From assembly GCA_002269645.1 (NCBI GenBank), contig NIVC01000251.1:434001-498000 (forward strand): DNA of 64,000 nucleotides, in the 5' to 3' direction. This document shows, piece by piece, positions 5,291 to 57,780 of this stretch. A model generated the notes under the pieces. That model had not been told where the DNA came from. It ran no database searches and was given only the letters and a program-made list of their open reading frames with translations. Both the position numbers and the translations under genes were made by a program. Numbering within the stretch: the first letter of the stretch is position 1; the number at the start of each line of letters is the position of its first letter. Origin of the DNA: Macrostomum lignano (lineage: Eukaryota).

Positions 5291-5870
<580 letters not shown>

Positions 5871-8950: not shown

Positions 8951-9459
8951 ATGTGAGTGACGGAAGCTACAAGGGTGAAAAAATGAAAACTGGTAATAAA
9001 GGAGAAATTCAGAAGAAATCACTTCCGAATAGTTAAAAGTACATTTCGAATAGAGCTTTCGATTGCAAGAGGTCGTAAAGTTCTTTCCTCGTCGCCAACC
9101 TGGGGCTCGCATAAACCCCCCAGGTAAAGTTATTATTATTAACTATAATTACGATTGTAAATCATAAACTGAGTTTGCATCTCCTCCTTTCCTCTGTCTT
9201 TCACCTCTAGACGAAGATTTTTCTGGCATTTGCGCAGATTGAAATCTGTATTAGGATCGAGCCAGAGGGGTGCCGCATGGATGCAGATAGCAGATGCAGG
9301 GGATTCAGGCTAAGTTAAATTATTCAATCCCTTTGCTTGTGCACTCAGGCTAAAGCAGAAGAGAAATCCATTGCTTTCTCTGGCACAAAACTTGTTGAAT
9401 TTTGAAAAACTATTAAGCTATAAACACCTGAAGTATTTGTTAAGTATTGGAAAACAGGA

Positions 9460-25697: not shown

Positions 25698-26279
25698 GTC
25701 TGCAGACAAGCAACCAAAGCGGTACTTACATATTTTTTATCATACTGTAGCGATCTTATGTTAACAAAAACAAACCGGAAACTTACTGACGCTGCTATCA
25801 ATCAATTTCCCAGCAGACGAAAATGATAATCCAGAGGCTTGGTTAATCAGCTGTTTAGATATAGTTTGAAAGAAACTGAGTTTCTTTGCTAGGACAAACT
25901 GCAATCATAAAAAAGTGATGGATAATATAAATTTCACAAATTGATTGTAGAGATTGCTTGTTTAAGATTTTACATTAAGAAAATTTTCACTATAGACTAC
26001 TTGTAGCAATTAAGAAAACAAAAATTCAGACGCAAACTGTCTAAAATATTCTGAAAACTACTGTTGGTAGGAGAATAGAATATTATGTAAAAACTATCAG
26101 AAAAAATCACCTTCACCTCACCTTCACCTTCACCTTAAAGGCTATTTTTTATTAAACAGTTTTAATCGTGATTGAGTGACCATTCTAGGATTGTGTCAGA
26201 AAACTTTGAAGACGATTAAAGTATTATTTTAAGGATGGTTAAAAAGGCGATATTAAGGATTATTTAAGGACGATTCAAA

Positions 26280-29200
26280 GAATTATTTAAGGGCGGTTCT
26301 AAGAATGATTCAAGGGCGATTCTAAGAATGATTCAAGGGCGGTTCTAAGAATAATTCAAGGGCGATTCTAAGAATGATTCAAGGGCGATTCTAAGAATGA
26401 TTCAAGGGCGGTTCTAAGAATGATTCAAGGGCGATTCTAAGAATGATTCAAGGGCGGTTCTAAGAATAATTCAAGGGCGATTCTAAGAATGATTCAAGGG
26501 CGGTTCTAAGAATGATTCAAGGGCGGTTCTAAGAATAATTCAAGGGCGATTCTAAGAATGATTCAAGGGCGGTTCTAAGAATAATTCAAGGGCGATTCTA
26601 AGAATGATTCAAGGGCGGTTCTAAGAATAATTCAAGGGCGATTCTAAGAATGATTCAAGGGCGATTCTAAGAATGATTCAATGGCGATTCTAAGAAAGGT
26701 TTAGGTACTATTCTTAGAATGATTCAAGGGCGATTCTAAGAATGATTCAAGGGCGATTCTAAGAAAGGTTCAAGGGCGATTCTAAGAATGATTCAATGGC
26801 GATTCTAAGAATGATTCAAGGGCGATTCTAAGAATAATTCAAGGGCGATTCTAAGAATGATTCAAGGGCGATTCTAAGAATGATTCAATGGCGATTCTAA
26901 GAATAATTCAAGGGCGATTCTAAGAATGATTCAAGGGCGATTTTAAAAATGATTCAATGGCGATTCTAAGAATAATTCAAGGGCGATTCTAAGAATGATT
27001 CAAGGGCGATTCTAAGAATGATTCAAGGGCGATTCTAAGAATGATTCAAGGGCGATTCTAAGAATGATTCAAGGGCGATTTTAAGAATGATTCAAGGGCG
27101 ATTCTAAGAATGATTCAAGGGCGATTCTAAGAATGATTCAAGGGCGATTCTAAGAATGATTCAAGGGCGATTCTAAGAATGATTCAAGGGCGGTTCTAAG
27201 AATAATTCAAGGGCGATTCTAAGAATGATTCAAGGGCGGTTCTAAGAATAATTCAAGGGCGATTCTAAGAATGATTCAAGGGCGATTCTAAGAATGATTC
27301 AATGGCGATTCTAAGAAAGGTTTAGGTACTATTCTTAGAATGATTCAAGGGCGATTCTAAGAATGATTCAAGGGCGATTCTAAGAAAGGTTCAAGGGCGA
27401 TTCTAAGAATGATTCAATGGCGATTCTAAGAATGATTCAAGGGCGATTCTAAGAATAATTCAAGGGCGATTCTAAGAATGATTCAAGGGCGATTCTAAGA
27501 ATGATTCAATGGCGATTCTAAGAATAATTCAAGGGCGATTCTAAGAATGATTCAAGGGCGATTTTAAAAATGATTCAATGGCGATTCTAAGAATAATTCA
27601 AGGGCGATTCTAAGAATGATTCAAGGGCGATTCTAAGAATGATTCAAGGGCGATTCTAAGAATGATTCAAGGGCGATTCTAAGAATGATTCAAGGGCGAT
27701 TTTAAGAATGATTCAAGGGCGATTCTAAGAATGATTCAAGGGCGATTCTAAGAATGATTCAAGGGCGATTCTAAGAATGATTCAAGGGCGATTCTAAGAA
27801 TGATTCAAGGGCGGTTCTAAGAATGATTCAAGGGCGATTCTAAGAATGATTCAAGGGCGGTTCTAAGAATGATTCAAGGGCGATTCTAAGAATGATTCAA
27901 GGGCGGTTCTAAGAATGATTCAAGGGCGATTCTAAGAATGATTCAAGGGCGGTTCTAAGAATGATTCAAGGGCGGTTCTAAGAATGATTCAAGGGCGGTT
28001 CTAAGAATGATTCAAGGGCGGTTCTGAGAATGATTCAAGGGCGATTCTGAGAATTATTCAAGGGCGGTTCTAGGAATGATTCAAGGGCGGTTCTAAGAAT
28101 GATTCAAGGGCGGTTCTAAGAATGATTCAAGGGCGATTCTAAGAATGATTCAAGGGCGGTTCTAAGAATGATTCAAGGGCGGTTCTAAGAATGATTCAAG
28201 GGCGGTTCTAAGAATGATTCAAGGGCGGTTCTGAGAATGATTCAAGGGCGATTCTGAGAATGATTCAAGGGCGGTTCTAGGAATGATTCAAGGGCGGTTC
28301 TAAGAATGATTCAAGGGCGGTTCTAAGAATGATTCAAGGGCGGTTCTGAGAATGATTCAAGGGCGATTCTGAGAATGATTCAAGGGCGGTTCTAGGAATG
28401 ATTCAAGGGCGGTTCTAAGAATGATTCAAGGGCGGTTCTAAGAATGATTTAAGGGCGGTTCTAAGAATGATTCAAGGGCGGTTCTAAGAATGATTCAAGG
28501 GCGATTCTAAGAATGATTCAAGGGCGGTTCTAAGAATAATTCAAGGGCGATTCTAAGAATGATTCAAGGGCGGTTCTAAGAATAATTCAAGGGCGATTCT
28601 AAGAATGATTCAAGGGCGATTCTAAGAATGATTCAATGGCGATTCTAAGAAAGGTTTAGGTACTATTCTTAGAATGATTCAAGGGCGATTCTAAGAATGA
28701 TTCAAGGGCGATTCTAAGAAAGGTTCAAGGGCGATTCTAAGAATGATTAAATGGCGATTCTAAGAATGATTCAAGGGCGATTCTAAGAATGATTCAAGGG
28801 CGATTCTAAGAACGATTCAAGGGCGATTCTAAGAATGATTCAATGGCGATTCTAAGAATAATTCAAGGGCGATTCTAAGAATGATTCAAGGGCGATTTTA
28901 AAAATGATTCAATGGCGATTCTAAGAATAATTCAAGGGCGATTCTAAGAATGATTCAAGGGCGATTCTAAGAATGATTCAAGGGCGATTCTAAGAATGAT
29001 TCAAGGGCGATTCTAAGAATGATTCAAGGGCGATTTTAAGAATGATTCAAGGGCGATTCTAAGAATGATTCAAGGGCGATTCTAAGAATGATTCAAGGGC
29101 GATTCTAAGAATGATTCAAGGGCGATTCTAAGAATGATTCAAGGGCGGTTCTAAGAATAATTCAAGGGCGATTCTAAGAATGATTCAAGGGCGGTTCTAA

Positions 29201-32200
29201 GAATAATTCAAGGGCGATTCTAAGAATGATTCAAGGGCGATTCTAAGAATGATTCAATGGCGATTCTAAGAAAGGTTTAGGTACTTTTCTTAGAATGATT
29301 CAAGGGCGATTCTAAGAATGATTCAAGGGCGATTCTAAGAAAGGTTCAAGGGCGATTCTAAGAATGATTCAATGGCGATTCTAAGAATGATTCAAGGGCG
29401 ATTCTAAGAATAATTCAAGGGCGATTCTAAGAATGATTCAAGGGCGGTTCTAAGAATGATTCAAGGGCGATTTTAAAAATGATTCAAGGGCGATTCTAAG
29501 AATAATTCAAGGGCGATTCTAAGAATGATTCAAGGGCGATTCTAAGAATGATTCAAGGGCGATTCTAAGAATGATTCGAGGGCGATTCTAAGAATGATTC
29601 AAGGGCGATTTTAAGAATGATTCAAGGGCGATTCTAAGAATGATTCAAGGGCGATTCTAAGAATGATTCAAGGGCGATTCTAAGAATGATTCAAGGGCGA
29701 TTCTAAGAATGATTCAAGGGCGGTTCTAAGAATGATTCAAGGGCGATTCTAAGAATGATTCAAGGGCGGTTCTAAGAATGATTCAAGGGCGATTCTAAGA
29801 ATGATTCAAGGGCGGTTCTAAGAATGATTCAAGGGCGATTCTAAGAATGATTCAAGGGCGGTTCTAAGAATGATTCAAGGGCGGTTCTAAGAATGATTCA
29901 AGGGCGGTTCTAAGAATGATTCAAGGGCGGTTCTGAGAATGATTCAAGGGCGATTCTGAGAATGATTCAAGGGCGGTTCTAGGAATGATTCAAGGGCGGT
30001 TCTAAGAATGATTCAAGGGCGGTTCTAAGAATGATTCAAGGGCGATTCTAAGAATGATTCAAGGGCGGTTCTAAGAATGATTCAAGGGCGGTTCTAAGAA
30101 TGATTCAAGGGCGGTTCTAGGAATGATTCAAGGGCGGTTCTAAGAATGATTCAAGGGCGGTTCTAAGAATGATTTAAGGGCGGTTCTAAGAATGATTCAA
30201 GGGCGATTCTAAGAATGATTAAGGGCGGTTCCAAGAATGATTCAAGGGCGGTTCTGAGAATGATTCAAGGGCGATTCTGAGAATGATTCAAGGGCGGTTC
30301 TAAGAATGATTCAAGGGCGGTTCTAAGAATGATTCAAGGGCGGTTCTAAGAATGATTTAAGGGCGGTTCTAAGAATGATTCAAGGGCGATTCTAAGAATG
30401 ATTAAGGGCGGTTCCAAGAATGATTCAAGGGCGGTTCTAGGAATGATTCAAGGGCGGTTCTAAGAATGATTCAAGGGCAATTCTAAGAATGATTCAAGGG
30501 CGATTCTAAGAATGACTCAAGGGCGATTCTAAGAAAGTTTCAAGGGTGATTCTAAGAAAGTTTCAAGGGTGATTCTAAGAATGATTCAAGGGCGATTCTA
30601 AGAATGATTCAAGGGCGGTTCTAAGAATGATTCAAGGGCGATTCTAAGAATGATTCAAGGGCGATTCTAAGAATGACTCAAGGGCGATTCTAAGAAAGTT
30701 TCAAGGGTGATTCTAAGAATGATTCAAGGGCGATTCTAAGAATGATTCAAGGGCGGTTCTAAGAATGATTCAAGGGCGATTCTAAGAATGATTCAAGGGC
30801 GATTCTAAGAATGATTCAATGGCGATTCTAAGAATGATTCAAGGGCGATTCTAAGAATAATTCAAGGGCGATTCTAAGAATGATTCAAGGGCGGTTCTAA
30901 GAATGATTCAAGGGCGATTTTAAAAATGATTCAAGGGCGATTCTAAGAATAATTCAAGGGCGATTCTAAGAATGATTCAAGGGCGATTCTAAGAATGATT
31001 CAAGGGCGATTCTAAGAATGATTCGAGGGCGATTCTAAGAATGATTCAAGGGCGATTTTAAGAATGATTCAAGGGCGATTCTAAGAATGATTCAAGGGCG
31101 ATTCTAAGAATGATTCAAGGGCGATTCTAAGAATGATTCAAGGGCGATTCTAAGAATGATTCAAGGGCGGTTCTAAGAATGATTCAAGGGCGATTCTAAG
31201 AATGATTCAAGGGCGGTTCTAAGAATGATTCAAGGGCGATTCTAAGAATGATTCAAGGGCGGTTCTAAGAATGATTCAAGGGCGATTCTAAGAATGATTC
31301 AAGGGCGGTTCTAAGAATGATTCAAGGGCGGTTCTAAGAATGATTCAAGGGCGGTTCTAAGAATGATTCAAGGGCGGTTCTGAGAATGATTCAAGGGCGA
31401 TTCTGAGAATGATTCAAGGGCGGTTCTAGAATGATTCAAGGGCGGTTCTAAGAATGATTCAAGGGCGGTTCTAAGAATGATTCAAGGGCGATTCTAAGAA
31501 TGATTCAAGGGCGGTTCTAAGAATGATTCAAGGGCGGTTCTAAGAATGATTCAAGGGCGGTTCTAGAATGATTCAAGGGCGGTTCTAAGAATGATTCAAG
31601 GGCGGTTCTAAGAATGATTTAAGGGCGGTTCTAAGAATGATTCAAGGGCGATTCTAAGAATGATTAAGGGCGGTTCCAAGAATGATTCAAGGGCGGTTCT
31701 GAGAATGATTCAAGGGCGATTCTGAGAATGATTCAAGGGCGGTTCTAAGAATGATTCAAGGGCGGTTCTAAGAATGATTCAAGGGCGGTTCTAAGAATGA
31801 TTTAAGGGCGGTTCTAAGAATGATTCAAGGGCGATTCTAAGAATGATTAAGGGCGGTTCCAAGAATGATTCAAGGGCGGTTCTAGAATGATTCAAGGGCG
31901 GTTCTAAGAATGATTCAAGGGCAATTCTAAGAATGATTCAAGGGCGATTCTAAGAATGACTCAAGGGCGATTCTAAGAAAGTTTCAAGGGTGATTCTAAG
32001 AAAGTTTCAAGGGTGATTCTAAGAATGATTCAAGGGCGATTCTAAGAATGATTCAAGGGCGGTTCTAAGAATGATTCAAGGGCGATTCTAAGAATGATTC
32101 AAGGGCGATTCTAAGAATGACTCAAGGGCGATTCTAAGAAAGTTTCAAGGGTGATTCTAAGAATGATTCAAGGGCGATTCTAAGAATGATTCAAGGGCGG

Positions 32201-33010
32201 TTCTAAGAATGATTCAAGGGCGATTCTAAGAATGATTCAAGGGCGATTCTAAGAATGATTCAAGGGCGATTCTAAGAATGATTCAAGGGCGATTCTAAGA
32301 ATGATTCAAGGGCGATTCTAAGAAAGTTTCAAGGGCGATTCTAAGAATGATTCAAGGGCGATTCTAAGAAAGTTTCAAGGGCGATTCTAAGAATGATTCA
32401 AGGGCGATTCTAAGAATGATTCAAGGGCGGTTCCAAGAATGATTCAAGGGCGGTTCTAAGAATGATTCAAGGGCGATTCTAAGAAAGTTTCAAGGGCGAT
32501 TCTAAGAAAGTTTCAAGGGCGATTCTAAGAAAGTTTCAAGGGCGATTCTAAGAAAGTTTCAAGGGCGATTCTAAGAATGATTCAAGGGCGATTCTAAGAA
32601 TGATTAGAGCGATTCTAAGAATGATTCAAGGGCGATTCTAAGAAAGTTTCAAGGGCGATTCTAAGAAATGTTCAGGGGCGATTCTAAAAAAAAAGTTTCA
32701 AGGGCGATTCTAAGAAAGTTTCAAGGGCGATTCTAAGAAAGTTTCAAGGGCGATTCTAAGAAATGTTCAGGGACTATTCTTAGAATGATTCAAGGGCGAT
32801 TCTAAGAAAGTTTCAAGGGCGATTCTAAGAAAGTTTCAAGGGCGATTCTAAGAAAGTTTCAAGGGCGATTCTAAGAAATGTTCAGGGACTATTCTTAGAA
32901 TGATTCAAGGGCGATTCTAAGAAAGTTTCAAGGGCGATTCTAAGAAAGTTTCAAGGGCGATTCTAAGAAAGTTTCAAGGGCGATTCTAAGAAATGATTCA
33001 GGGACTATTA
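26280..33010. repeat. 6.7-kb 23-bp satellite TTCTAAGAATGATTCAAGGGCGR (~290 copies) with higher-order repeats
   Basis: Direct inspection; variant units recur at 621, 1955 and 1447 bp spacings. Confidence 0.98.
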
Positions 33011-34147
33011 CTATAATGATTCAAAATTATATTGCCAGACAGTGCAACTGAAAGAAAAACCATACGCATACCGCGTGAATCTAAATAATTTAACAAACTC
33101 ACTTGCTTAAAAAACCGGCATGATTTTGTTTAGCACAGAACGATGAAACAACCTGGCACAGGTAATTAATAATTAATTAATTATTGTGATTGAGAGCTGG
33201 ATAACAAAAACCTAATATTTTAAAATCATATTTTTAAGAAACGGAGAACATATTGAAGCTAAAAGGTTATAAGAAAATTATTTTTAGTTTTAAATGCCTT
33301 ATTAAGAGATATTATTCCTAGATAATAAAAAAAGCTGAATAAAACGCAAATGATAAAAAAATGTTCGAGAGACACTACTTAAGTAGTGTTGGCCCGGTAA
33401 GCAGACAAAATGCTAAATATTTTTATAGATTAATTATTGTTAGCTAGTAAACAGGTTGCATCATGAAATTTTAACAGACAGAGCAATATATCGCGCACTA
33501 CTTGCTAGTAGCATCGTGTTTGCAGAATGCTAAACATTATTTCTGTTTTTCGTCTTCTAAAACCGTACAAATGAATGAAACAACAATTGAGAGAACATTT
33601 TTTTCCAGACTATTATGTCGTCTGATTTTTTGTTACGTTTCTTTGTTTCTCATTTCACAATGTTTTGTTTTTCAACGCCAGCAAAATTATTACACACACA
33701 GAGACAAATATGCCTACTAATAACAGGCAGCAAAGTAAGTAGTATTTAGTGCGAGAATGATTACAATAAAAATTACGATTTTGTTGGACTGGAACAAGAA
33801 ACGAAACAGAAAAAAACCGGCACATTGAAAAGATGACTTAAACCTTGAGACTGGGGTGACAAGTTGCTCAAGTTTCATTGAGTTTTGAATTGTTTAAAAA
33901 ATTGACACGCAATTAATTATAATTCATATTATTATAGCTAAAACACGACAACAGACAAGTAAGAATTTACTATTATTATTTAATTTGTTTAAACTGTATA
34001 AAAGACAGCGACACTGGTATTTTCAGCTCGATACAAACGCAACTAACAGCAAAGCAATTCAAGGTTTTGATAACCGTCAGTTATTAACTACAGGTACCGG
34101 GGGTGCTGGATGTACTTTTATTTTTAGAGAAAAAAAGAGGTTTTCCT

Positions 34148-34861
34148 TCACTCAGCAGCGGCAGCAGCGGCGGTGTACTTGTCCAGCTCCGCGTCAAGAT
34201 CTTCTTTGCTGGGCACCGGCTGCCTGCCACCGCCGCCGCCCCGACCTCCGCCGCGACCGCCGCGACCTCCTCGAGCAGCGCCGCGACCACCGCCTCGACC
34301 TCCGCGGTTGGCGAAACCGCCACTACCGCCGGTGCCACCACCGCGTCGCTGCTGCTGAGGCTGTTGAAGCACCCGACGCCCGCCAGTCATTCCGCCGCCG
34401 CCGCCACCTCCGACAAGTTCAATTCGCATCGGCCGGCCGTCAAGCGGCACGCCATTGTACTGATTGAAAGCCTTAGCGGCACTTTGCTGCCGGTCAAAGT
34501 ACACATCAGCTGTGCCCAACGATCTGCCCGAACGATCGTAATGAATTGTAGTTTTCTTAACCCGACCGAATTCGGAGAACAATTCGAACAAATCGGAATC
34601 CGTGACGCCAAAGTCTAGATTAGAGATTAACAATTTGCCAGTCTGCTGTTGAGATTGCATCGGCTGATTTGATGGGGCATTGTTAGCGGAAGCTGGACGA
34701 CGCCATTCGCGCTTTTGTACGCCGCCGCCTCCGCGGATGCCGCCGCCAGCGCCGCCACCGCCCCCAGCACCTCGACGGGCTCCGCCGCGGCCGCGGCCAC
34801 GACCGGCGGGCTTTGTCATCTTGATGATGTCATCTAAGCTAAGAGCGATTTTATCGGGCAT
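34148..34861 (-). CDS. ALYREF: THO complex subunit 4 / ALYREF mRNA export adaptor (237 aa, intronless CDS)
   Basis: N-terminal UBM (DKIALSLDDII), RGG tracts, RRM (KLLISNLDFGVTDSDLFELFSEFG...HYDRSGRSLGTADV...QYNGVPLDGRPMRIEL), C-terminal UBM (SKEDLDAELDKY). Confidence 0.96.
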   Translation of the reverse strand: MPDKIALSLDDIIKMTKPAGRGRGRGGARRGAGGGGGAGGGIRGGGGVQKREWRRPASANNAPSNQPMQSQQQTGKLLISNLDFGVTDSDLFELFSEFGRVKKTTIHYDRSGRSLGTADVYFDRQQSAAKAFNQYNGVPLDGRPMRIELVGGGGGGGMTGGRRVLQQPQQQRRGGGTGGSGGFANRGGRGGGRGAARGGRGGRGGGRGGGGGRQPVPSKEDLDAELDKYTAAAAAAE

Positions 34862-34979
34862 GTTGATTGATTGATTGATTTAGTATGACGGTCTTTGTTC
34901 GAATGAGAGGTTAGGTTGGCTGCGCTTGCTGAAAAGTATCAACAGAAATATTAATCAAAATATGAATTATTAATTTATA

Positions 34980-35605
34980 GACAAGCTAAATACCCCCTAT
35001 ATGATGGATACAGGAGCTAAATACCCCACTATATGATGGACACAGAAGCTAAATACCCCACTATATGATGGATACAGAAGCTAAATACCCCGCAGTATGA
35101 TGGATACAGAAGCTAAATACCCCACTATATGATGGACACAGAAGCTAAATACCCCGCAGTATGATGGATACAGAAGCTAAATACCCCGCAGTATGATGGA
35201 TACAGGAGCTAAATACCCCACTATATGATGGATACAGGAGCTAAATACCCCACTATATGATGGACACAGGAGCTAAATACCCCACTATATGATAGACACA
35301 GGAGCTAAATACCCCACTATATGATGGACACAGGAGCTAAATACCCCACTATATGATGGATACAGAAGCTAAATACCCCACTATATGATGGACACAGAAG
35401 CTAAATACCCCGCAGTATGATGGACACAGAAGCTAAATACCCCACTATATGATGGACACAGAAGCTAAATACCCCGCAGTATGATGGATACAGAAGCTAA
35501 ATACCCCGCAGTATGATGGACACAGAAGCTAGATACCCCACAACAGGATAGACCCAGAAGCTAAATACCTAAATATCCCACAATATGATGAACACAGAAG
35601 CTAAA
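34980..35605. repeat. 32-bp minisatellite AGCTAAATACCCCACTATATGATGGAYACAGR between RPS15 copy A and ALYREF
   Basis: Direct inspection. Confidence 0.95.
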
Positions 35606-35763
35606 TACCACATTACAATAGCAAGGATAAAGGACCTAAATGAAGACAGAGACAATCATTGTTCCAAGCCAAGAATACCCTTCAACTCTGTTTATTTCGG
35701 CATTAAAAAACACTTGAAATTTGAATCTCCGACAGTTTTAAAAGTACATTGCTCATGAGATCC

Positions 35764-36198
35764 CTACTTCAGCGGGATGAACCGAGAGCTGTGAGTAGCG
35801 CCAATACCCGGTCGGCCATGCTTCACAGGCTTGTAGGTGAGCGAGAACTCTCCCAGGTAGTGCCCAATCATGTCCGGTTTCACTTCAACAGCATTGAAAG
35901 TCTTGCCGTTGTACACGCCAACAATGGAGCCGACCATCTCGGGCAGCACAGGCATGTTGCGCAGGTGAGTCTTGACAGTTGCGGGCTTCTCACCAACAAC
36001 GCATTCCTTCTTAGCCTTGCGCAGCCGCTTCAGCAGAGACTGGTGCTTGCGCTTCAGGCCTCGGTTGAGGCGGCGCCGAATTCTGCAGGTGGCCAACTCG
36101 GAGAACTGATCGATGCTCATGTCCAGCAGCTGGTCCAGCTCCACTCCGCGGTAATAGTACTTGCGGAAGGTCCTGCTCTTTTTCTGGTCGTCAGCCAT
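35764..36198 (-). CDS. RPS15: 40S ribosomal protein S15 (uS19), copy A
   Basis: 144 aa: [19 protein letters not shown]...VKTHLRNM...[15 protein letters not shown]...[41 protein letters not shown] on the minus strand at 35691-35696. Confidence 0.98.
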
Positions 36199-36904
36199 TG
36201 GTTAGACATGCAAGAGAATGGGATCAATGTGGAAATGTGTACACTTCGCGTGAGCTTGTGCCTGCCAAGGACTACTAAAGTGGACAGACGGGAAACTGCC
36301 GGCTTCTCCAAACGAAAAAATACACTACGGTGATAGGAAGTTTTTTTTCAGAACAATTTTTGTCCTGAAAAAATGAAAACTTCCTATTTCCGTAGTGTAT
36401 TTGCCTGAATCCCAAAGTTTTCCAAGAATCGCGGCTTCTCGTCCTACTACCCGAGTAGTCTGAGGTGCCTGCTTGGGGGGGGGGGGGCACTTTACGTTGG
36501 CTGTGGGTGAACTAATTAAAAATATTTTAATACCCCCTTAGAAAGAGTCAACAAAACAACTGCTTTGGATTTCGAAGTGTTCCTATTTCGGTAATAATGA
36601 TATTAAACCTTAAACCTTGGGAAAAGAAACAGAAAATCAATAAATACAACAATGGAAAAACTCAAGCCAACACCAAAATTAGGCTGGTTTTATTTTAAGT
36701 TTCGCCAAAATGCGAAAAAAATTCCGAAACTGATTTAACTAATTCAAGTTTTTTTCAACGCGACACTACTGGCGGACACGATATTTCGCCATTTTGACAG
36801 TTATTATTACTGTTCAATCAGATTTTAAACTCAAGATTGCCGCGGACACAAAATAACTATTATTCAATGCCAGGAAAATGCTTCAGTTCAAAAAATCGCT
36901 AGTC

Positions 36905-38137
36905 TTAAGCGTCAGCAGGTACACGTTTGTTGCTTTTCTTTTTCTGCTTCTGCGGCCGACCGCCTTTCTTCTTGTCGGCAGTCTTCTGCTTTTGCTCAGT
37001 GCTAGCACTCTTGGAAATTTTGCCTATCTCTTTTCTCTTGTTCTTTGACTGCTTTAACTTCTTCTCAGCTTGAGCAGTCTTGGCCTTGGTGGTCTTCTTC
37101 TTCTTACCAGCTTTGGACAGCAACTCTTGGTCCCAGAGACTAGCGCTTAGCTCAGCCAGGTCTTTATCCAAATCTCTGGCTTCCTTTTTCTTTGTTGTCT
37201 TCGCCAAATCGGCGCCGCTAGCAGTCTTTGTAGCGGCTGGATCGGCGACAAAGATTGGCACATTGCCGCAAGACGGATAGCGCAGATACAAACCGGCAAT
37301 TGACAAGCCGTATTGACTAGCAAGTCTCTGAGCTGACTGTTGACAAGCTGACACAATGTTAGCTAATAGTCGCTGGTCTTCATCCAATCGATCTTTGTCA
37401 CTACTACTGCTACCCCGCGATAGCGGAGTCATCTGGCCGACCAAGCAAGACAAAGTGCTACCATTCAAACAGACTCTAACGCAGCGCAGAGCGCGTTCAA
37501 TTTCAGCGGACAAATTCTTTGCTTCCAAATCGATAGGCATAGGCAATTTCCGCCTATTCTTAGCGCCAAACTGTTTGCCAAGCTTATTGCCTAATCGGTG
37601 CACAATGGTCCGATCGGCTAAGAAGTAATCGTAGGCATAGCAGAGCCTACGCTTAGCCTCGTGAGGCATGTAAGCCACGGTCAGTTCGCGCAGAGGCAGC
37701 ACCGTTAGACTGGCTTTAACGCCGCAAGATTTCAACAGTTCAGCGTAATGCGCCGATGTAGCATCATAATCTGCCGGAGCTCTTGGCAAATCTTTTGTGA
37801 TAAGACAACCGGATTCTGTGTCCGGACAGTGCACCAAGTTTGGCAGCGTCAAGATTATCGTGTTACCATCCGAGGATTTGATGGATTTCGCTTCTGATGA
37901 CAAGGTAATAGTGAGCAATAACTCGGACGGTTCAAACAACTGAAGACTCTTTTTAATATTATTGGGAGTTCTATAACAAATAGCGCCGTTAGCAACGGAA
38001 GCTAGTCGAACTGTGCGCAGAGCGTTCGAAGCTCGTTTAGTAAGTTCGTCCTGCGTCAAGGGTAGCGAATGCTGAAGTTGTTCAGCTGCCGGAGGCTGGG
38101 CAGCCTTGACAGATGTTGCTTGCTGGTTCTTGCTCAT
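36905..38137 (-). CDS. RSL1D1: Ribosomal L1 domain-containing protein 1 (RSL1D1/Cic1/Utp30-like), 410 aa, intronless
   Basis: CLITKD; LPLRELTVAYMPHEAKRRLCYAYDYFLADRTI; LGKQF...KLPMPIDLEAKNLSAEIERAL pattern of the L1-like domain; Lys-rich nucleolar-type C-terminal tail. Confidence 0.85.
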   Translation of the reverse strand: MSKNQQATSVKAAQPPAAEQLQHSLPLTQDELTKRASNALRTVRLASVANGAICYRTPNNIKKSLQLFEPSELLLTITLSSEAKSIKSSDGNTIILTLPNLVHCPDTESGCLITKDLPRAPADYDATSAHYAELLKSCGVKASLTVLPLRELTVAYMPHEAKRRLCYAYDYFLADRTIVHRLGNKLGKQFGAKNRRKLPMPIDLEAKNLSAEIERALRCVRVCLNGSTLSCLVGQMTPLSRGSSSSDKDRLDEDQRLLANIVSACQQSAQRLASQYGLSIAGLYLRYPSCGNVPIFVADPAATKTASGADLAKTTKKKEARDLDKDLAELSASLWDQELLSKAGKKKKTTKAKTAQAEKKLKQSKNKRKEIGKISKSASTEQKQKTADKKKGGRPQKQKKKSNKRVPADA

Positions 38138-38264
38138 TTTGGCGACTGAAATTTAAGTGGAGGGATAATTATCAATCGGGTAGAGTAATTATAATCCATA
38201 AACTAAGAAGAAATTTATTCCTAATGTGCAGAGGGAAATTTTCGATGAGAGTAGATAGAGGGTA

Positions 38265-38720
38265 GTTATCGGTAAGATAGAGGGTAGTTATCGGTAAGAT
38301 AGAGAGGGTAGTTATCGGTAAGATAGAGAGGGTAGTTATCGGTAAGATAGAGAGGGTAGTTATCGGTAAGATAGAGAGGGTAGTTATCGGTAAGATAGAG
38401 AGGGTAGTTATCGGTAAGATAGAGAGGGTAGTTATCGGTAAGATAGAGAGGGTAGTTATCGGTAAGATAGAGAGGGTAGTTATCGGTAAGATAGAGAGGG
38501 TAGTTATCGGTAAGATAGAGAGGGTAGTTATCGGTAAGATAGAGAGGGTAGTTATCGGTAAGATAGAGAGGGTAGTTATCGGTAAGATAGAGAGGGTAGT
38601 TATCGGTAAGATAGAGAGGGTAGTTATCGGTAAGATAGAGAGGGTAGTTATCGGTAAAATAGAGAGCGTAGTTATCGATAAGATAGAGGGTAGTTATCGG
38701 TAAGATAAAGAGAGTAGTTA
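38265..38720. repeat. 24-bp minisatellite GATAGAGAGGGTAGTTATCGGTAA between RPS15 copy B and RSL1D1
   Basis: 8-aa periodicity TDNYPLYL; near-perfect copies. Confidence 0.96.
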
Positions 38721-39151
38721 TCAAGAAGATAAAGGGAAATAAACGATAATTTAGAGATGCACTTATCGATGAGAGAGGAAATTTATCGATAATATAGAGA
38801 TGCAGTTATCGATAAGTTGAAGAGGGTAGTTATCGATAAGTTGAAGAGGGTAGTTATCGATAAGGTAGAGAGGTAATCATATGTAAGGAGTAAACCTTAT
38901 AAACAATCTAATATACTAAATAATAGTTCTAAGGTAGAAAACTCGAAGCAAAAAGTCAAAGACAAAACAAAAATATTCCAAGCTATTAAACTGTTAGTCG
39001 ATCAAACTGATCGATATATTATTTTTTTCCAATTCACTGATCAAACTCAACAAAACCGTTATTATCTGGCCAAGAATTCACCGCCAAAGCCTTCTAACTA
39101 ACAGAAAATCACACTCGCAGTTTTCAGTCTCTTTCCAGCTAGCAGCAAAGC

Positions 39152-39586
39152 TCACTTCAGCGGGATAAACCGAGAGCTGTGAGTAGCACCAATACCCGGT
39201 CGGCCGTGCTTCACAGGCTTGTAGGTGAGCGAGAACTCTCCCAGGTAGTGCCCAATCATATCCGGTTTCACTTCAACAGCATTGAAAGTCTTGCCGTTGT
39301 ACACGCCAACAATGGAGCCGACCATCTCGGGCAGCACAGGCATGTTGCGCAGGTGAGTCTTGACAGTTGCGGGCTTCTCACCAACAACGCATTCCTTCTT
39401 AGCCTTGCGCAGCCGCTTCAGCAGAGACTGGTGCTTGCGCTTCAGGCCTCGGTTGAGGCGGCGGCGAATCCTGCAGGTGGCCAACTCGGAGAACTGATCG
39501 ATGCTCATGTCCAGCAGCTGGTCCAGCTCCACTCCGCGGTAATAGTACTTGCGGAAGGTCCTGCTCTTCTTCTGGTCGTCAGCCAT
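39152..39586 (-). CDS. RPS15: 40S ribosomal protein S15 (uS19), copy B, protein identical to copy A
   Basis: Same 144-aa translation; differs from copy A by 7 synonymous substitutions plus the stop codon (TGA vs TAG) by my manual comparison. Confidence 0.98.
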
Positions 39587-41652
39587 TGGTTAGACTTCTT
39601 GCTTGAAATATATCAAAAGCATTTGCATCATTTTCAGTTAAATGTATGGCTGCTCATAATGTAATGATTAAAAGTCAATACTATTGGGTATGAGTATGCT
39701 AAAGACTATTATATTTGTATTTAAAAATGCCCAGAAGGTAATTTTTTATAAAAAATATACTAAAAGTTATTTCGCTTAATGCCTGTCTTAACAGGTTTGT
39801 TTACCTGGCAAAATAAAAAGGAACTACAATGGATCATAGCTTCAATTATTCTGGCAGTTTGCAGAGCACCACCTTTGTTTCTTTATTGGCAAAATTTTTG
39901 TACAAACACCAGTGAAATAAAAGAAGTCTTTTATTTCAACAAATTTTTATCCTGTTACTTTTGTGTAGATACACAAAATTTACACTTTGAAAATACACTA
40001 GATTGTACAATATTGGTTTGTTTTTACACTTTTCAGTATGCAATTTTGCTTTTTCTTTAATGCATAAACAAATTTTTACACATCTAAATCAACTTTAAGT
40101 ATTGTCAACTCTAAGAGATCTAACTCTTAGTATTGTCAATTACAGTGTGTCTATAGAAATATCAATAATTAATATCAAATATCAAAATATGTCCACTGAT
40201 TGGCACTTTCTATCCTTTAATTGACACTTCTTGTCCACTCACTGACAAATCCTATCTATTTACCAATGCTTCCTGTCCACTTACTGACATTCTTAAAATT
40301 AAAAAAGAACATTTGCGTTGCTATACTTATATTGTGCATAACACAGTATTTTTTCCTATCTACTAATATGTTTTCTTCTTAAAAACTAAAAGAAAAAATG
40401 AAGTGCATGAAACAAAAATAATGGTATACTACTTCTATATCTTTAAAAATATAAAGTTTATTATTATTTTTTTCAAATACAAATATGTTATAATTAGAAA
40501 CAAAACAGCTTTTTTAGTTTTTAGACAGTTTGACTTTTTATATTAGTACATATTAGGTTTAATGCCATAAAAAAGGGTAAGACCTCACTGGGTTTATATA
40601 CTAGGTTTATACACTATACTCTAGATCATTTAGTATATATACAAAAATTTCAATATGCATTATCCATGCATAGCAAAAGTAAGTGTGTATAGTTAGCACG
40701 CATCATTTCAAAAAATAATGTATATATATACCTAGTATGCTTTTTATAGAATCAGAGAAAAATTATTTTGAAGCAAAAAAGTTTGTTTTTTAGGCTTACT
40801 AAGTTTTGTAAGTTTATAAACCATTAAAAAAATCTTTGCAAATATTGATTTTCTATATATTATTACCAATAAAGCAAAAAAATCTACCAAATTATTTGCA
40901 AAAAATGGGTTTATTATGCAATTTAAAAGATCATTTAATATTGCAATAATAATATAGTTTTGAAAATAGACATGTTGTAAACACTTTTTAACATACATTT
41001 GATAACTAAGCATATTTAATTTTTGTTTGGGTATACATCCTATAGTTTGGAACACCTTGAATGTATGCCAGACTAAAATCTCTCACAATATTTTTGGTAT
41101 GCTAGTGTACACCAAATTTTACGACAATGAATTATTTTGTTTTTAAATTGTGTAAAATAACATTTTTAGCTAATAATTTGGTTATTACTTTTGCTTTTTT
41201 GCTGATATTATTTATAGCGAAAACTTAATACATGCAAAGATTTGTTTAAATTTTTTATTACGAGCTTTAAAAACCCGGAAACTTAAAACTGCTTAAAAAT
41301 AAACTCATTATTTTATTTTATTTTTTATTTTTATCTTATTACTGTTCACGAACTCTTCCATGTGATTCTATTAACTGCATGCACACTATTTTCTTAGACT
41401 ATTTGATTTGATTCCGCAACTGCAGGAACATGTACGCTACTTTTTGAATATGCATTTTTATATGCCAGATAGTACGCCAGATTTCAAAAAGTAAAAAATT
41501 GTACGCCAAGTGTACACCAAAAGTTGTGAATGTATGCTGGATAAATCCGGCATACCACTAGCATGATCCAGACTAGTTTGTATATCAATACAAAAAATTG
41601 TTATTAGACTATTTATTTAGGCCTACTATACTATTATGTCAAGATATATCCA

Positions 41653-42730
41653 GGCTTCTTGAAGTTTATGTTGATAAAATAGTTGCAATTTTTATAGGAT
41701 CATAATTCTGTCTCTATAAGGGTTTTTGATAGTGCTGATTTTAAATTTGAGCTTCATTTTTTGGTAGCTTTAACCCAATTATATGTTGCTTAAAGCCACA
41801 AATATCTAATATCTAATATCTAATAGCTTTTTAGATATTAATATTAATCTTTGATTGGCTTAATGAAGTTCTAGCACATGTGCTACTATATTAAAAGTCT
41901 AGTGGATACATTTTCAAAAATGTATTTGTAGAAACTTTTGCTTACTGAACCTCATTAAATGAATAGGAAATTGAGTAAATTGTGATTGAGTACAGGTAAC
42001 TTTCTGCTGTTTTATTTGCATTTTTGAGATTTTCGGTGTCCCATAGGTCTGTGGTCATTTCGTCTGCCACCTTTTCGTCTGCCAAAGAATTTTAGCAGAC
42101 AAAACGACTTTTTTATTTATGTTTATTTTGGTTCACTTATTTAGTATTTTTTATGTAGGGAATTAAAATAAATTAGTATAAGCAAGTTTTAAGTATGTTT
42201 TCTTATTTATATTGATACATTTTGTTTTTCTTCATTTTCTACGAAACCTAACTAACCTATATAATACTTTCAACGCATCAATGCGTGTGTGCCTACAATT
42301 TCGATTGCTCCTTACATTTTACACTTTGTGCATTTAAGCTAGTTGTATTCGTGAATAAATTGCATATGAGTTTACATACACGAAAAAAAAGAAAGTTGGA
42401 AGGAAACTAAATGGTTGGAGATATTTGCTTTTGGCTTTGTGTATTTATATGCAACATATTAGCTCCGGAACTTTCAGAAAAATCCTAGCATTATAATAAA
42501 TTACAATTAATAAGACATTTACATTACACTTCCATGCGAAGCTTGATAACATAATTAGTTATTCCAATTTATATATGATATATATTGGCAGACGAAACGA
42601 CTTTATCGTATATTGGCAGACGAAAAGGCGGCACACGAAATGACCATCAACCGTCCTATAAGTGTCTACTGCAAGTTTTAGAAAAATTGGAAAATTGGAA
42701 GTATTTTATCAACATAAACTTCAAGAAGCC
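41653..42730. mobile_element. Non-autonomous DNA transposon-like element with 29-bp perfect terminal inverted repeats (hosts a nested MITE)
   Basis: GGCTTCTTGAAGTTTATGTTGATAAAATA (41653-41681) is the exact reverse complement of 42702-42730. No coding capacity; TSD not clear. Confidence 0.7.
42046..42652. mobile_element. Nested ~607-bp MITE with ~40-bp imperfect TIRs and an 8-bp near-identical TSD
   Basis: Left GGTCATTTCGTCTGCCACCTTTTCGTCTGCCAA vs right TTGGCAGACGAAAAGGCGGCACACGAAATGACC (2 mismatches). Flanks GTCCCATA (42038-42045) / GTCCTATA (42653-42660). Confidence 0.75.
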
Positions 42731-44937
42731 CATATATCCTATTATACATTAAAATATTTAGACCTTTGTTATACATTAGGAAATCTTGGCATACATGTGT
42801 TGCCTTTTGAACTATAGGTATTTAGCTTAAAAATAATAAGAGAAATCAAATAATAGTAAGAGCTATAAGACTTAGATTATAGGCTTATTTATGTCTAACA
42901 AAAATGGTATTACAAAACTTCACATAAGTATACAATAAAGATTGTACAATAGTATAACTATAACCTCTAGTCTAGTTTACAGTACACACAAGCTAAAAAG
43001 TGAAGAAGATCTATTCTATTATAATATTTTTATATTTTATTCTTTTATATACAAGGTTGGACATTGAATTAGGGCCTACAATACAAAAAAACAAATTAAT
43101 TATAATCTAAATATACTAAATTGTTAATTTTGTGTTTTTTATCTGTCTGTCTATTGTTAATTTTTTTCAAGAACCATCTGGCTAAGCTTTTTTTCAAATT
43201 AGCTTTAAAAAATCTCTATTTTTGGGGGCTAATGGCAAAGTGTAGGCCTAACTCATTTGATAAAAAGTTTAAATAGGATCTATTTTTTAAAAAAGTTCAA
43301 AGAGAAATTGTCCATTGGCAAATAGAGTGGCAACTTTTCAATGTTGCGAAGTTCACACAAAATTTTGAACAATAAAATCAATGTGGACATAGGTCACATA
43401 TTCGAAAAAAACTATTTTTTCATGCTTTCAATGTTTGAATTTTTAATTTGAATGCTCCCCTCCCTGGCCTGGGGACTTAATGCGCTACATTTAAAACTAA
43501 CTTTATAGATAGCTCATTTTGCCATTTATTATTTTTGCTGCAGATTCCTTAGTTACTATGCTATTATTCTTTTCCGATTCCATTGCAGATTCTGCCTTTC
43601 ACTGGTTAGGCCTACCTGCTATCTATACCAATTAGTGACTTTGTCAACCATTTGAGAAAAGGCCAATTAATAAAATCACTAGCACCCAAATTTTCTAGCA
43701 TAAAGGCTATTTACTTTCTACGTTTCTAGACTTCGCAACACCAGGATTTACAAGCTCGTTTGGGGTAACTACGTTTACTGAAAAAAAAACAGAAAATGAT
43801 TATTAGTTACTTTGAACCTAAATAATTGCGTCAAACCAGTTTTAAAACATTTAAGATATAACAAATTTAAAAAATGCGTTTAGCTTTCAAATGTAAAAAG
43901 GTATATTTGCTTACTTTTTAAAATAACTAATGTAATAAACCGCTTTCAAGATTGTGTTAAATTTAAAAAAATATATAATTCAATAAACCAGTCGTGTTAT
44001 AAACTATTCTGTTTGAACAATAACAAAAACAAAGAACTGCGCATATGTAATGAGGGTTTGCCTGCGACATGTTACTTAGGGGATCAATATCACGAAGGAA
44101 TAATTACATGTATACTTAAAGATGGTAAATCTCGAAGGAATACATTTACTGTAATGTAATGTTCTACTGTACTGCTTACAAAGTTTGCGTATTTAATTTA
44201 AGTACATGTAACATGTAAAATGCTAAGAAAGTACGACCAAAGGAGAAAATTACATATACATCGTGACTGTAATTTTGGAGGTTCAACTTTGAATTCAAGG
44301 TTGAAGGCTCAATTTCAGAAAAAACTGATAAATATTGTTCCTAAATGTATTGGCCATGGAAGAACGAGCAAGACTTCATATACATGTACATGTACATTTG
44401 GTCCAATTAAGTTTGAAAAACCGGCGGATTGCTATGGCGACGTCGCGGAACGTTGACGTCAACAGCCATAAATCAAGGTTAATAGACTTGCTCTGTCATA
44501 AACTTGATCGGGAGCCGTACATTGTGTAAAAAATATCACCCTAAATATATTAATTAATGCATGCATATATGTACGTATACATGTACATGTACGTAGTAAT
44601 GTTTACAAGTGTCTGTGCATCATGTATGTAAGAAAAAGCTTTGCTGAAGCAAACACGTGCATCTAACAATGCAATTTGGAATCTCGATTAAGATGATAGA
44701 AATATATTGATCATGTACATGTACTATGTGCATTTAATTAATTTTATCGTTCGAGTTGCTTCACTTTTTTCATTATTACATGCAGATCGTCTGTTTTTAA
44801 TGAAATAAAACGAATTGTCTCTCCTTAAGTTAAGTTATTAAGTTATTCATCCTTAATTCAATTTGCATACTGAATCTTTCTTGTCAATGATATAGCGTTA
44901 ATTTGCATGCAGTTTCAATAATGACGTTGACGATTAA

Positions 44938-57546: not shown

Positions 57547-57780
57547 GAGGCAATATTGGTAGAGCTAAGAGTAAGATCAAGGCAGACAGTTTCACAAGCT
57601 CCGAACCTTCTCAAATTCCCAAACGATTGAGAGTGCATATTGCGTCTATTATCAACTGCCGCGTGCAAAATGCTTGCAAAGAAATCAGTGAGCGCAATTT
57701 TTTGTCTGGAAATTCCACAAATAATTTTTTTACATGTAACACTACATGTACACACACACAACACGCACTTTTTAATTGCA

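What the first reader, a model, noticed from the sequence alone, without database searches (positions are those of the whole stretch)
34148..39600. Operon-like cassette: RPS15-[minisatellite]-RSL1D1 then RPS15-[minisatellite]-ALYREF, with acceptor sites just before the start codons
Seen: four intronless, co-oriented genes for translation, ribosome biogenesis and mRNA export, 0.7-1.0 kb apart. RSL1D1 has TTTCAG 8 nt before its ATG (38151-38146), ALYREF has TTTTCAG 67 nt before its ATG (AG at 34930-34929), and RPS15-B has AG 8 nt before its ATG. Each spacer after an RPS15 copy is mostly a tandem array with no obvious donor-bearing 5' exon; RPS15-A has AATAAA at 35691-35696. Known: flatworms use spliced-leader trans-splicing, which can resolve polycistronic transcripts. 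Inference: two RPS15-led bicistrons (or one longer operon) coupling a ribosomal protein to its biogenesis and export factors, with minisatellites as intercistronic spacers.
Basis: partly seen in the sequence, partly recalled or inferred. Interest (0 to 1): 0.7.

Follow-up and report, generated by a model that had tools for sequence, protein, structure and literature searches.

The report
Trans-spliced housekeeping gene cluster in Macrostomum
This is an ordinary example of the operon-like, spliced-leader-processed gene clusters already described in the flatworm Macrostomum lignano; the one odd detail is that the reference assembly has spliced-leader letters written over some splice acceptor sites, most likely because it was polished with RNA-seq reads.

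Summary
The window is Macrostomum lignano contig NIVC01000251.1. On the minus strand it carries four intronless genes: RPS15-B, a 24-bp array, an RSL1D1-like gene, RPS15-A, a 32-bp array, and ALYREF.

- Published transcripts for both are flagged TRANSSPLICED.
- The deposited RSL1D1 model starts at the predicted junction.
- In the three homeologous copies, the 2-7 bases before the junctions of RSL1D1, RPS15-A and the next gene (CysRS) switch between a canonical acceptor and the last bases of the SL (TTGCATG).

The assembly was polished with RNA-seq, so I read that switch as an artefact. It hides RPS15-A's acceptor in this contig, which weakens the "two bicistrons" model.

The cluster meets the published operational definition of an M. 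lignano operon: same strand, trans-spliced, repeat-adjusted spacers under 1 kb. Polycistronic transcription itself could not be tested.

The minisatellites are background, since 41% of the window is such arrays. The two RPS15 copies match only from the junction to the stop codon and evolve in concert.

Verdict: a new member of a known kind, of low to moderate interest.

The parts
39152..39586 (-). RPS15-B coding sequence (uS19, 144 aa, no intron)
   Evidence: ORF. Pfam Ribosomal_S19 E=9e-34. PDB 40S S15 E=3e-72. 100% identical to NIVC01000251.1.
39595..39600 (-). AAGAAG just before TCTAACCA-ATG of RPS15-B. A candidate acceptor that does not fit the consensus. Homology with RPS15-A starts right after it.
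   Evidence: Identical in all three homeologs. Does not fit YTNCAG. No SL imprint seen.
38257..38873 (.). 24-bp minisatellite, about 26 copies, in the RPS15-B to RSL1D1 spacer
   Evidence: TRF. Present at the same place in all three homeologs, with spans of about 360-800 bp.
38214..38219 (-). The only canonical AATAAA downstream of RPS15-B, at +933 from its stop and about 70 nt before the RSL1D1 junction
   Evidence: Conserved in the three homeologs. The variants AATAAT and AATATA lie at +129 and +132.
38146..38151 (-). TTTCAG trans-splice acceptor of RSL1D1; junction at 38146|38145
   Evidence: The deposited protein model P0007 starts AKMSK, a 5'-partial ORF opening at GCC two bases after the AG. 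Paralog L001 reads TGCATG, the SL tail, here. Transcript RNA1509_4001 is flagged TRANSSPLICED.
36905..38137 (-). RSL1D1-like coding sequence (ribosomal L1 domain, 410 aa, no intron)
36689..36694 (-). AATAAA 211 nt after the RSL1D1 stop
   Evidence: Fits the 1549-nt published transcript: 35 + 8 + 1233 + about 273.
36318..36402 (.). Palindromic element with 27-nt arms that are 93% complementary, in the RSL1D1 to RPS15-A spacer
   Evidence: The region differs in L002.
36207..36213 (-). TTGCATG, the last 7 bases of the M. lignano SL, sitting where paralog L001 has the acceptor TTTCCAG. RPS15-A junction at 36207|36206.
   Evidence: SL sequence from PMC8629364. Assembly polished with RNA-seq.
35764..36198 (-). 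RPS15-A coding sequence, giving a protein identical to RPS15-B
35691..35696 (-). AATAAA 68 nt after the RPS15-A stop
34983..35609 (.). 32-bp minisatellite, about 18-20 copies, in the RPS15-A to ALYREF spacer
34929..34935 (-). TTTTCAG candidate trans-splice acceptor of ALYREF, 67 nt before the ATG
   Evidence: Identical in all three homeologs. Fits YTNCAG. No direct SL evidence obtained.
34148..34861 (-). ALYREF/THOC4-like coding sequence (237 aa, no intron); AATAAA at 34117-34122
   Evidence: The 6 differences from each of the other two homeologs are all synonymous.
26246..33024 (.). 6.8-kb array of a 23-bp unit between ALYREF and the next gene on the same strand
25893..25905 (-). Acceptor gattgcAG|TTTGTCC of the downstream cysteinyl-tRNA synthetase gene; junction at 25899|25898
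   Evidence: The annotated partial CDS starts at the first base after the AG. L002 reads TG instead of AG.

Best explanation
The region is a cluster of same-strand, intronless housekeeping genes of Macrostomum lignano, in the order RPS15-B, RSL1D1-like, RPS15-A, ALYREF. Their mRNAs receive the 35-nt spliced leader at acceptors just upstream of the start codons.

Shown here:
- The genes, their order, and the conservation of the whole cassette in three homeologous copies.
- SL addition to RSL1D1 and RPS15 mRNAs.
- The exact junctions TTTCAG|TCGCC and TTTCCAG|TCTAACCA.
- Repeat-adjusted spacers of about 390, 700 or less, and 210 nt. These meet the published operational criterion for an M. lignano operon.

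Inferred:
- The four genes are transcribed as one precursor from a promoter upstream of RPS15-B.
- The precursor is resolved by 3' cleavage and polyadenylation of each upstream gene plus SL trans-splicing of each downstream gene.
- The minisatellites are passive filler that has expanded inside the spacers.

The SL-tail bases at some junctions are most likely written into the assembly by Pilon polishing with RNA-seq reads. The two RPS15 copies are an old duplication whose coding parts are kept alike by gene conversion, and perhaps in part by the same polishing.
For: Organism and locus:
- The RSL1D1-like ORF is 99% identical to M. lignano BOX15_Mlig001018g4.
- The window is 100% identical to NIVC01000251.1.
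- All three homeologous contigs carry the full cassette, arrays included.

SL use in this species:
- Published for M. lignano: 30% of genes are trans-spliced and 15% are in operons, the acceptor motif is [T/C]TNCAG, and repeats inflate operon spacers (PMC8629364).

SL addition to these genes:
- Transcripts RNA1509_4001 (RSL1D1) and RNA1509_556 (RPS15) are flagged TRANSSPLICED (PMC5173321 supplement).
- The deposited RSL1D1 model starts two bases after the AG, and the CysRS model starts at the first base after its AG.

Paralog comparison:
- RPS15-A reads TTTCCAG, TTGCATG or TTTCATG in the three copies.
- RSL1D1 reads TTTCAG, TTTCAG or TGCATG.
- CysRS reads TTGCAG, TTGCAG or TTGCTG.
- That is 8-10 substitutions. 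All are contiguous with the junction and all go to the SL base, which has a chance of (1/3)^8 to (1/3)^10.

Other:
- The assembly was polished with Pilon using RNA-seq mapped by STAR (PMC5730564 Methods).
- Spacer lengths and polyadenylation signals.
- RPS15 concerted evolution: the only fixed A/B difference is the stop codon, and the flanks show no homology.
Against: - No transcript spanning two genes was seen. No TSS, CAGE or RAMPAGE data could be read here.
- The raw spacers (700-1000 nt) are far from the roughly 100-nt mode of M. lignano operons. After removing the arrays they are still 200-700 nt.
- RPS15 mRNA is about 8-fold more abundant than RSL1D1 mRNA in the published tables. A single promoter explains that only with different RNA stabilities or through copy number.
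- 60% of trans-spliced genes in this species are not in operons, so trans-splicing alone does not show co-transcription.
- The RPS15-B acceptor does not fit the consensus, and its trans-splicing is not assigned to a particular copy.
- ALYREF has no direct SL evidence.
- In L001 the deposited RSL1D1 model starts 3 nt further downstream than the junction.
Confidence: 0.55

Rival explanations
1. Independent genes. Each of the four genes has its own promoter in the spacer in front of it, and SL trans-splicing only trims a short outron. The cluster is then a run of same-strand housekeeping genes and not an operon.
For: - Most trans-spliced M. lignano genes (about 60%) are not in operons.
- Spacers of 700-1000 nt are long enough to hold promoters.
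- RPS15 and RSL1D1 steady-state levels differ about 8-fold.
- The A+T-rich 5 kb upstream of RPS15-B shows that at least the first gene has room for its own control region.
Against: - The cluster meets the published operon criterion once repeats are subtracted.
- 61-75% of two of the spacers is array sequence whose copy number varies freely between homeologs.
- In L002 a new roughly 33-nt array has expanded 25 nt in front of the RPS15-A junction. That is easier to tolerate in an intercistronic region or outron than in a compact promoter.
Confidence: 0.3
2. Two bicistrons. RPS15-B with RSL1D1 would be one unit and RPS15-A with ALYREF a second, with RPS15-A transcribed from its own promoter and not trans-spliced.
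For: - In this contig RPS15-A has no AG at the junction.
- A pyrimidine-rich stretch (CCCATTCTCTT) precedes it.
- The RSL1D1 to RPS15-A spacer is the one with the most non-array sequence.
Against: - Paralog L001 has a canonical acceptor cTTTCCAG| at exactly that position.
- The bases that replace it in the window and in L002 are those of the SL tail. This means SL-carrying RPS15 reads or mRNAs end at this junction.
- The pyrimidine stretch is what a 3' splice site looks like.
Confidence: 0.08
3. Real SL relics. The SL-tail bases at the junctions are true genomic changes, made by recombination of the genes with cDNA copies of their own trans-spliced mRNAs. The same process would have removed the introns and would explain why the two RPS15 copies become alike exactly at the splice junction.
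For: - All four cluster genes lack introns, although the species averages about 4.9 introns per gene.
- RPS15 A/B homology begins exactly at the junction.
- A full SL sequence encoded in front of a protein-coding gene has been reported for this genome (PMC8629364).
Against: - The changes are substitutions only, 2-7 nt long, and always contiguous with the junction. They differ between nearly identical homeologs.
- Each change destroys the AG of an otherwise intact gene that is under selection. Four such events in 15 site-copies is implausibly frequent.
- The assembly is documented to have been polished with RNA-seq reads, which predicts this pattern.
- RPS15 homology ends at the stop codon, not at the poly(A) site, and there is no poly(A) tract or target-site duplication.
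Confidence: 0.1

Closest known systems
Macrostomum lignano SL trans-spliced operons / transcriptional units (Wudarski et al. 2017, PMC5730564; Ustyantsev & Berezikov 2021, PMC8629364)
   Same: Same species and the same single 35-nt SL. Same acceptor motif [T/C]TNCAG, same-strand neighbours, conserved and neoblast-enriched housekeeping genes, and spacers inflated by tandem repeats. Repeat-adjusted distances are under 1 kb.
   Different: Nothing in kind. This particular cassette is not singled out in the papers I could search. Its spacers lie in the upper part of the accepted range. It contains a duplicated gene (RPS15) at positions 1 and 3.
Caenorhabditis elegans operons
   Same: Co-oriented genes for basic gene-expression machinery. 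Downstream genes are trans-spliced close to their start codons. The upstream gene's polyadenylation signal lies ahead of the next acceptor.
   Different: C. elegans uses a dedicated SL2 for downstream genes and spacers of about 100 nt. Here there is one SL for everything, and the spacers are 700-1000 nt and mostly minisatellite.
Single-SL operons of other flatworms and tunicates (Schistosoma mansoni, Ciona, Oikopleura)
   Same: A single SL serves both monocistronic and operon genes.
   Different: Those operons usually have very short or no intercistronic regions. No synteny with them was tested.
Relic spliced leaders in dinoflagellate genes (recycling of processed cDNAs; recalled from the literature, not checked here)
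   Same: SL-derived bases are found in genomic DNA directly in front of the mature 5' end of a gene.
   Different: The dinoflagellate relics are longer, often tandem, and accompany retroposed genes. Here only 2-7 bases are replaced, by substitution, in an assembly polished with RNA-seq.
Concerted evolution of duplicated ribosomal-protein genes (for example yeast RP paralog pairs; from general knowledge)
   Same: Coding sequences are kept nearly identical, with a mosaic sharing of variants, while flanks are unalignable.
   Different: Here the copies are 3.4 kb apart on the same strand with another gene between them. Part of the identity could come from RNA-seq polishing.

Membership tests
M. 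lignano operon (operational definition of Ustyantsev & Berezikov 2021) | Adjacent genes in the same orientation with no opposite-strand gene between them | tested here: met
   Four ORFs on the minus strand. No credible ORF or Pfam-bearing gene on the plus strand between them. Same gene calls in the deposited annotation.
M. lignano operon (operational definition of Ustyantsev & Berezikov 2021) | The downstream gene of each pair is SL trans-spliced | tested here: inconclusive
   Met for RSL1D1: TRANSSPLICED transcript, model start at the junction, SL imprint. Met for RPS15 as a gene, with a canonical acceptor and imprint at copy A. For ALYREF there is only a conserved TTTTCAG motif.
M. lignano operon (operational definition of Ustyantsev & Berezikov 2021) | Intergenic distance below 1 kb after subtracting repeats | tested here: met
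   Stop-to-junction spacers are 1006, 698 and 835 nt. After subtracting the arrays (617 and 627 nt) they are about 389, 698 and 208 nt. The true 3' ends would make them shorter.
Eukaryotic operon in the strict sense | One promoter and a polycistronic precursor RNA that spans the genes | not testable with these tools
   No RNA reads or TSS data could be reached. No transcript contigs for these proteins are on record in the assembly collection.
C. elegans-type operon | A specialised SL2 for downstream genes and intercistronic regions of about 100 nt | tested here: not met
   M. lignano has a single SL. The spacers here are 700-1000 nt.
Processed retrogene derived from an SL-bearing mRNA (considered for RPS15-A) | SL sequence at the 5' end, the parental 3' UTR, a poly(A) tract and target-site duplication | tested here: not met
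   Only 7 SL bases are present, and they are replaced by a normal acceptor in L001. 3' UTR homology with RPS15-B is not significant (score 11, against 10.9 +/- 1.8 in shuffles). No poly(A) tract.
SL RNA gene | Full 35-nt SL followed by a GT donor and an Sm site | tested here: not met
   No match to the SL with up to 3 mismatches anywhere in the window. No Rfam family hit.
uS19 / RPS15, RSL1D1, ALYREF protein families | Significant full-length similarity to the named proteins | tested here: met
   Pfam and PDB searches. RSL1D1 is the best hit for the L1-domain protein, but Utp30 is the next (2.8e-12 against 1.4e-8), so that orthology is the least secure of the three.

The most novel reading that the evidence does not exclude
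The SL-tail bases at the junctions of RPS15-A, RSL1D1 and CysRS are real genomic changes. On this reading, highly expressed, trans-spliced M. lignano genes repeatedly recombine with cDNA copies of their own mature mRNAs. That would erase introns, write pieces of the spliced leader over acceptor sites, and homogenise paralogs from the splice junction onwards.
Probability: 0.1. Interest if true: 0.65.

Novelty: new member of a known kind. Interest (0 to 1): 0.3.

Why it matters
As biology it adds one more predicted operon to a species in which about 15% of genes are already assigned to operons, so little changes.

Two practical points are worth passing on.
- In the Mlig_3_7 reference, some trans-splice acceptors of highly expressed genes appear to have been overwritten with spliced-leader bases. 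It can also lower acceptor-motif counts and create false 'broken' splice sites and false differences between homeologs.
- The same imprint can be used as a marker. It gives the exact SL junction from genomic sequence alone when paralogs are compared.

If the imprint were instead real, it would show frequent cDNA-mediated gene conversion in an animal germline.

Tried and rejected
1. RPS15-A as a retrocopy of an SL-bearing mRNA. Rejected: L001 has a normal acceptor there, there is no 3' UTR homology and no poly(A) tract.
2. Reading operon membership from locus tags such as Mlig001018g4. Rejected: the gN index numbers paralog copies across contigs. The phospholipase B-like genes g1 and g2 lie on different contigs.
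3. Looking for transcript contigs that carry the SL or span two genes. The collection holds only the three NCBI genome contigs for these proteins.
4. Searching for an SL RNA gene or any known RNA family in the window. Nothing found.
5. Looking for an analogous imprint at the cis-splice junctions of the CysRS gene, to separate artefact from real conversion. The introns are full of arrays, and the few clear junctions are identical between copies, so this was uninformative.
6. The other eight TTGCATG sites in the window. Their number is about what chance gives, and none lies at a recognisable gene start.
7. A cluster of changes 20 nt inside the CysRS first exon in L002 that yields TATTGC. It is out of register with any junction, so I treated it as chance.
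8. Names for the CysRS paralogs, to test whether they share a transcriptional-unit prefix. The search returned nothing.
9. The supplement of PMC5816591 does not list these genes, and no paper mentions Mlig001018.
10. The bacterial promoter/terminator scan was not used because it does not apply to this organism.

Full report
**What is there**

On the minus strand the window holds four uninterrupted ORFs: RPS15-B at 39586..39152, an L1-domain gene at 38137..36905, RPS15-A at 36198..35764, and an RRM/FoP gene at 34861..34148. Two tandem arrays lie between them, a 24-bp unit at 38257-38873 and a 32-bp unit at 34983-35609.

Pfam and PDB searches identify the products:
- uS19/RPS15, E=3e-72 to 40S S15 chains.
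- An RSL1D1-like protein. The best solved relative is human RSL1D1 (2.8e-12), and the next is Utp30 (1.4e-8).
- ALYREF/THOC4, 2.5e-41.

**Where it comes from**

The RSL1D1-like protein is 99% identical to Macrostomum lignano BOX15_Mlig001018g4. The cassette is 100% identical to GCA_002269645.1 contig NIVC01000251.1. From the coordinates in those calls, the window corresponds to about 434,001-498,000 of that record.

Two further contigs, NIVC01001879.1 (L001) and NIVC01000175.1 (L002), carry homeologous copies of the cassette. Identity is about 98-99% in the coding parts and roughly 86-98% in the spacers. These copies have the same gene order and both arrays in the same places, but with different copy numbers.

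A phospholipase B-like gene lies 5.3 kb upstream on the same strand. A cysteinyl-tRNA synthetase gene (CysRS) lies downstream on the same strand, beyond a 6.8-kb array of a 23-bp unit.

**What is already known about this species**

The following comes from PMC5730564 and PMC8629364.
- M. lignano adds one 35-nt spliced leader, CGGTCTCTTACTGCGAAGACTCAATTTATTGCATG, to about 30% of its genes.
- About 15% of genes are assigned to operons of two to nine genes.
- The top acceptor motif is [T/C]TNCAG.
- The authors state that repeats inflate the spacers inside operons. They call two same-strand trans-spliced neighbours an operon when the repeat-adjusted distance is under 1 kb.

**Evidence that the acceptors are real SL sites**

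1. The supplement of Grudniewska et al. 2016 (PMC5173321) lists RNA1509_4001 (RSL1D1, 1549 nt) and RNA1509_556 (RPS15, 696 nt, grouped with RNA1509_23719). Both are flagged TRANSSPLICED and both are classed as neoblast-enriched. The 1549 nt fit 35 (SL) + 8 + 1233 + about 273, with the AATAAA lying 211 nt after the stop.
2. The deposited RSL1D1 model on this contig starts AKMSK. That is a 5'-open ORF beginning at GCC, two bases after the AG of TTTCAG. The CysRS models start at the first base after gattgcAG. The authors' pipeline sets 5' ends from SL-read peaks, so these starts point to SL junctions. The L001 RSL1D1 model starts 3 nt further downstream and does not fit as neatly.
3. The three homeologs differ at exactly these junctions:
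   - RPS15-A: cTTTCCAG|TCTAACCA in L001, cTTGCATG| in the window, cTTTCATG| in L002.
   - RSL1D1: TTTCAG|TCGCC in the window and L002, TGCATG| in L001.
   - CysRS: TTGCAG| in the window and L001, TTGCTG| in L002.

   In each case one or two copies keep a canonical acceptor. The others carry the last 2, 4, 6 or 7 bases of the SL (...TTGCATG), contiguous with the junction, with no change in length. That makes 8-10 substitutions, all to the SL base. Chance would give this with probability (1/3)^8 to (1/3)^10, even before counting their clustering at the junctions. TTGCATG on its own is not rare, with nine copies in the window. It is the position and the paralog contrast that carry the weight.

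**What the SL-tail bases are**

The Methods of PMC5730564 state that the Canu assembly was polished with Pilon, using both genomic Illumina reads and RNA-seq reads mapped by STAR. Reads from SL-carrying mRNAs of highly expressed genes, aligned a few bases past the junction, would outvote genomic reads and write SL bases over the acceptor. The effect would be strongest next to the junction and would fade with distance. That is the pattern seen.

The alternative is real recombination with cDNA. That would require four independent events in 15 site-copies of nearly identical homeologs, each destroying the AG of an otherwise intact gene. ALYREF shows only synonymous differences, and RSL1D1 keeps an open frame in all three copies. 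I therefore favour the artefact, at roughly 85:10, but I could not look at raw genomic reads.

Either way the imprint marks where the SL is joined. One caveat applies. RPS15-A and RPS15-B are identical for the first bases after the junction, so SL reads from either copy could have produced the imprint at copy A.

The L001 copy shows a textbook acceptor at that position, so RPS15-A is itself a trans-splice target. RPS15-B has only AAGAAG| (or TTTCAAG| seven bases further up), which does not fit the consensus. It may be the non-trans-spliced or weakly trans-spliced first gene. In the published set, 18% of operons start with a non-trans-spliced gene.

**Is it an operon?**

By the published operational rule, yes.
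- The genes are on the same strand, and at least RSL1D1 and RPS15 are trans-spliced.
- Stop-to-junction spacers are 1006, 698 and 835 nt, which shrink to about 389, 698 and 208 nt after removing the arrays. CysRS falls outside the rule, at about 1.4 kb after adjustment in L001.
- Canonical polyadenylation signals lie 211, 68 and 26 nt after the stops of RSL1D1, RPS15-A and ALYREF.
- RPS15-B has none until +933, about 70 nt before the RSL1D1 junction. Only the variants AATAAT and AATATA occur, at +129 and +132.

Nothing I could run shows a precursor RNA or excludes promoters in the spacers. The roughly 8-fold higher RPS15 level and the fact that most trans-spliced genes in this species are monocistronic keep the independent-genes model alive. 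I put co-transcription at a little over one half.

**The minisatellites**

Arrays with 20-32-bp units cover 41% of the whole window. These include introns of CysRS and 6.8 kb after ALYREF. The two arrays in the cassette are unrelated in sequence and vary in length between homeologs. L002 has a third array of about seven 33-nt units, grown from a single-copy sequence 25 nt before the RPS15-A junction. The arrays are therefore genomic background that the spacers tolerate, as already noted for this species, and not a designed feature.

**The RPS15 duplication**

The two copies align only from G|TCTAACCA, 8-9 nt before the ATG, to the last sense codon. The 3' UTRs and upstream flanks show no similarity beyond shuffled controls.

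Among the six copies in the three loci, the only difference fixed between positions A and B is the stop codon (TGA against TAG). The other ten variable sites, all synonymous, are shared in a mosaic. For example, L002-B differs from window-A at only 2 sites. This is concerted evolution of an old duplication, possibly exaggerated by RNA-seq polishing.

**Functional reading**

RPS15 is a 40S protein. RSL1D1 appears in pre-60S structures, and ALYREF exports mRNA. The grouping is therefore the generic housekeeping and neoblast-enriched mix typical of operons, not a ribosomal protein coupled to its own assembly factor.

**Verdict**

The operon is plausible and fits a known class. The two-bicistron layout and a special role for the minisatellites are not supported.

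Noticed in passing
window 1-64000: About 26 kb (41%) of the window is tandem arrays, mostly with 20-32-bp units, plus several tetranucleotide runs. Many units share motifs such as GAGATCTC or GGGGTATT.
   Followed up: partly
L002 14585-14586 (NIVC01000175.1); window 25899-25900: The CysRS trans-splice acceptor AG reads TG in L002. This is a one-base version of the SL-tail imprint, and it makes the gene look as if it had lost its acceptor.
   Followed up: yes
L002 6001-9767; L001 11944-13859: Deposited annotation problems caused by the duplicated RPS15. In NIVC01000175.1 one 144-aa RPS15 model is joined from copy B to copy A across 3.7 kb, and RSL1D1 inside it is left unannotated. In NIVC01001879.1, RPS15-A and ALYREF are present in the DNA but have no gene model.
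   Followed up: partly
L002 about 4831-5872: A 1.05-kb insertion with long terminal inverted repeats of roughly 190 nt, flanked by TA, lies 117 nt upstream of the RPS15-B start codon in this homeolog only. It looks like a non-autonomous DNA transposon.
   Followed up: no
L002 about 9070-9300 (alignment A2 columns 690-960): A unit of about 33 nt (GGCACACGCTCACGCGAGGTGTACACATTTCC) is single-copy in the window and in L001. In L002 it is expanded to about seven copies just upstream of the RPS15-A junction, which looks like a minisatellite caught at birth.
   Followed up: partly
window 36318-36402: A palindrome with 27-nt arms (93% complementary) and a nested 14-nt hairpin lies in the RSL1D1 to RPS15-A spacer, next to a run of 13 C. 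It has no Rfam match. It could be a small foldback element.
   Followed up: partly
window 44938-46748 (minus strand): The phospholipase B-like gene is one 528-aa ORF in L001. In the window it is split into two overlapping ORFs of 251 and 413 aa (98.5% identity with 7 gap positions), and it is annotated as 413 aa. This is either a frameshift or an assembly indel.
   Followed up: partly
window 34148-46748: Five consecutive genes on one strand have no introns (PLB-like, RPS15, RSL1D1, RPS15, ALYREF), although the species averages about 4.9 introns per gene. The next gene, CysRS, has array-filled introns.
   Followed up: no
window 55500-57600 (plus strand): G+C-rich exons encode a glycine-rich protein (GGGGGGSFVF..., GGGGGA...). 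An ATTGCATG 8-mer at 55938 lies inside this region but not at a recognisable gene start.
   Followed up: no
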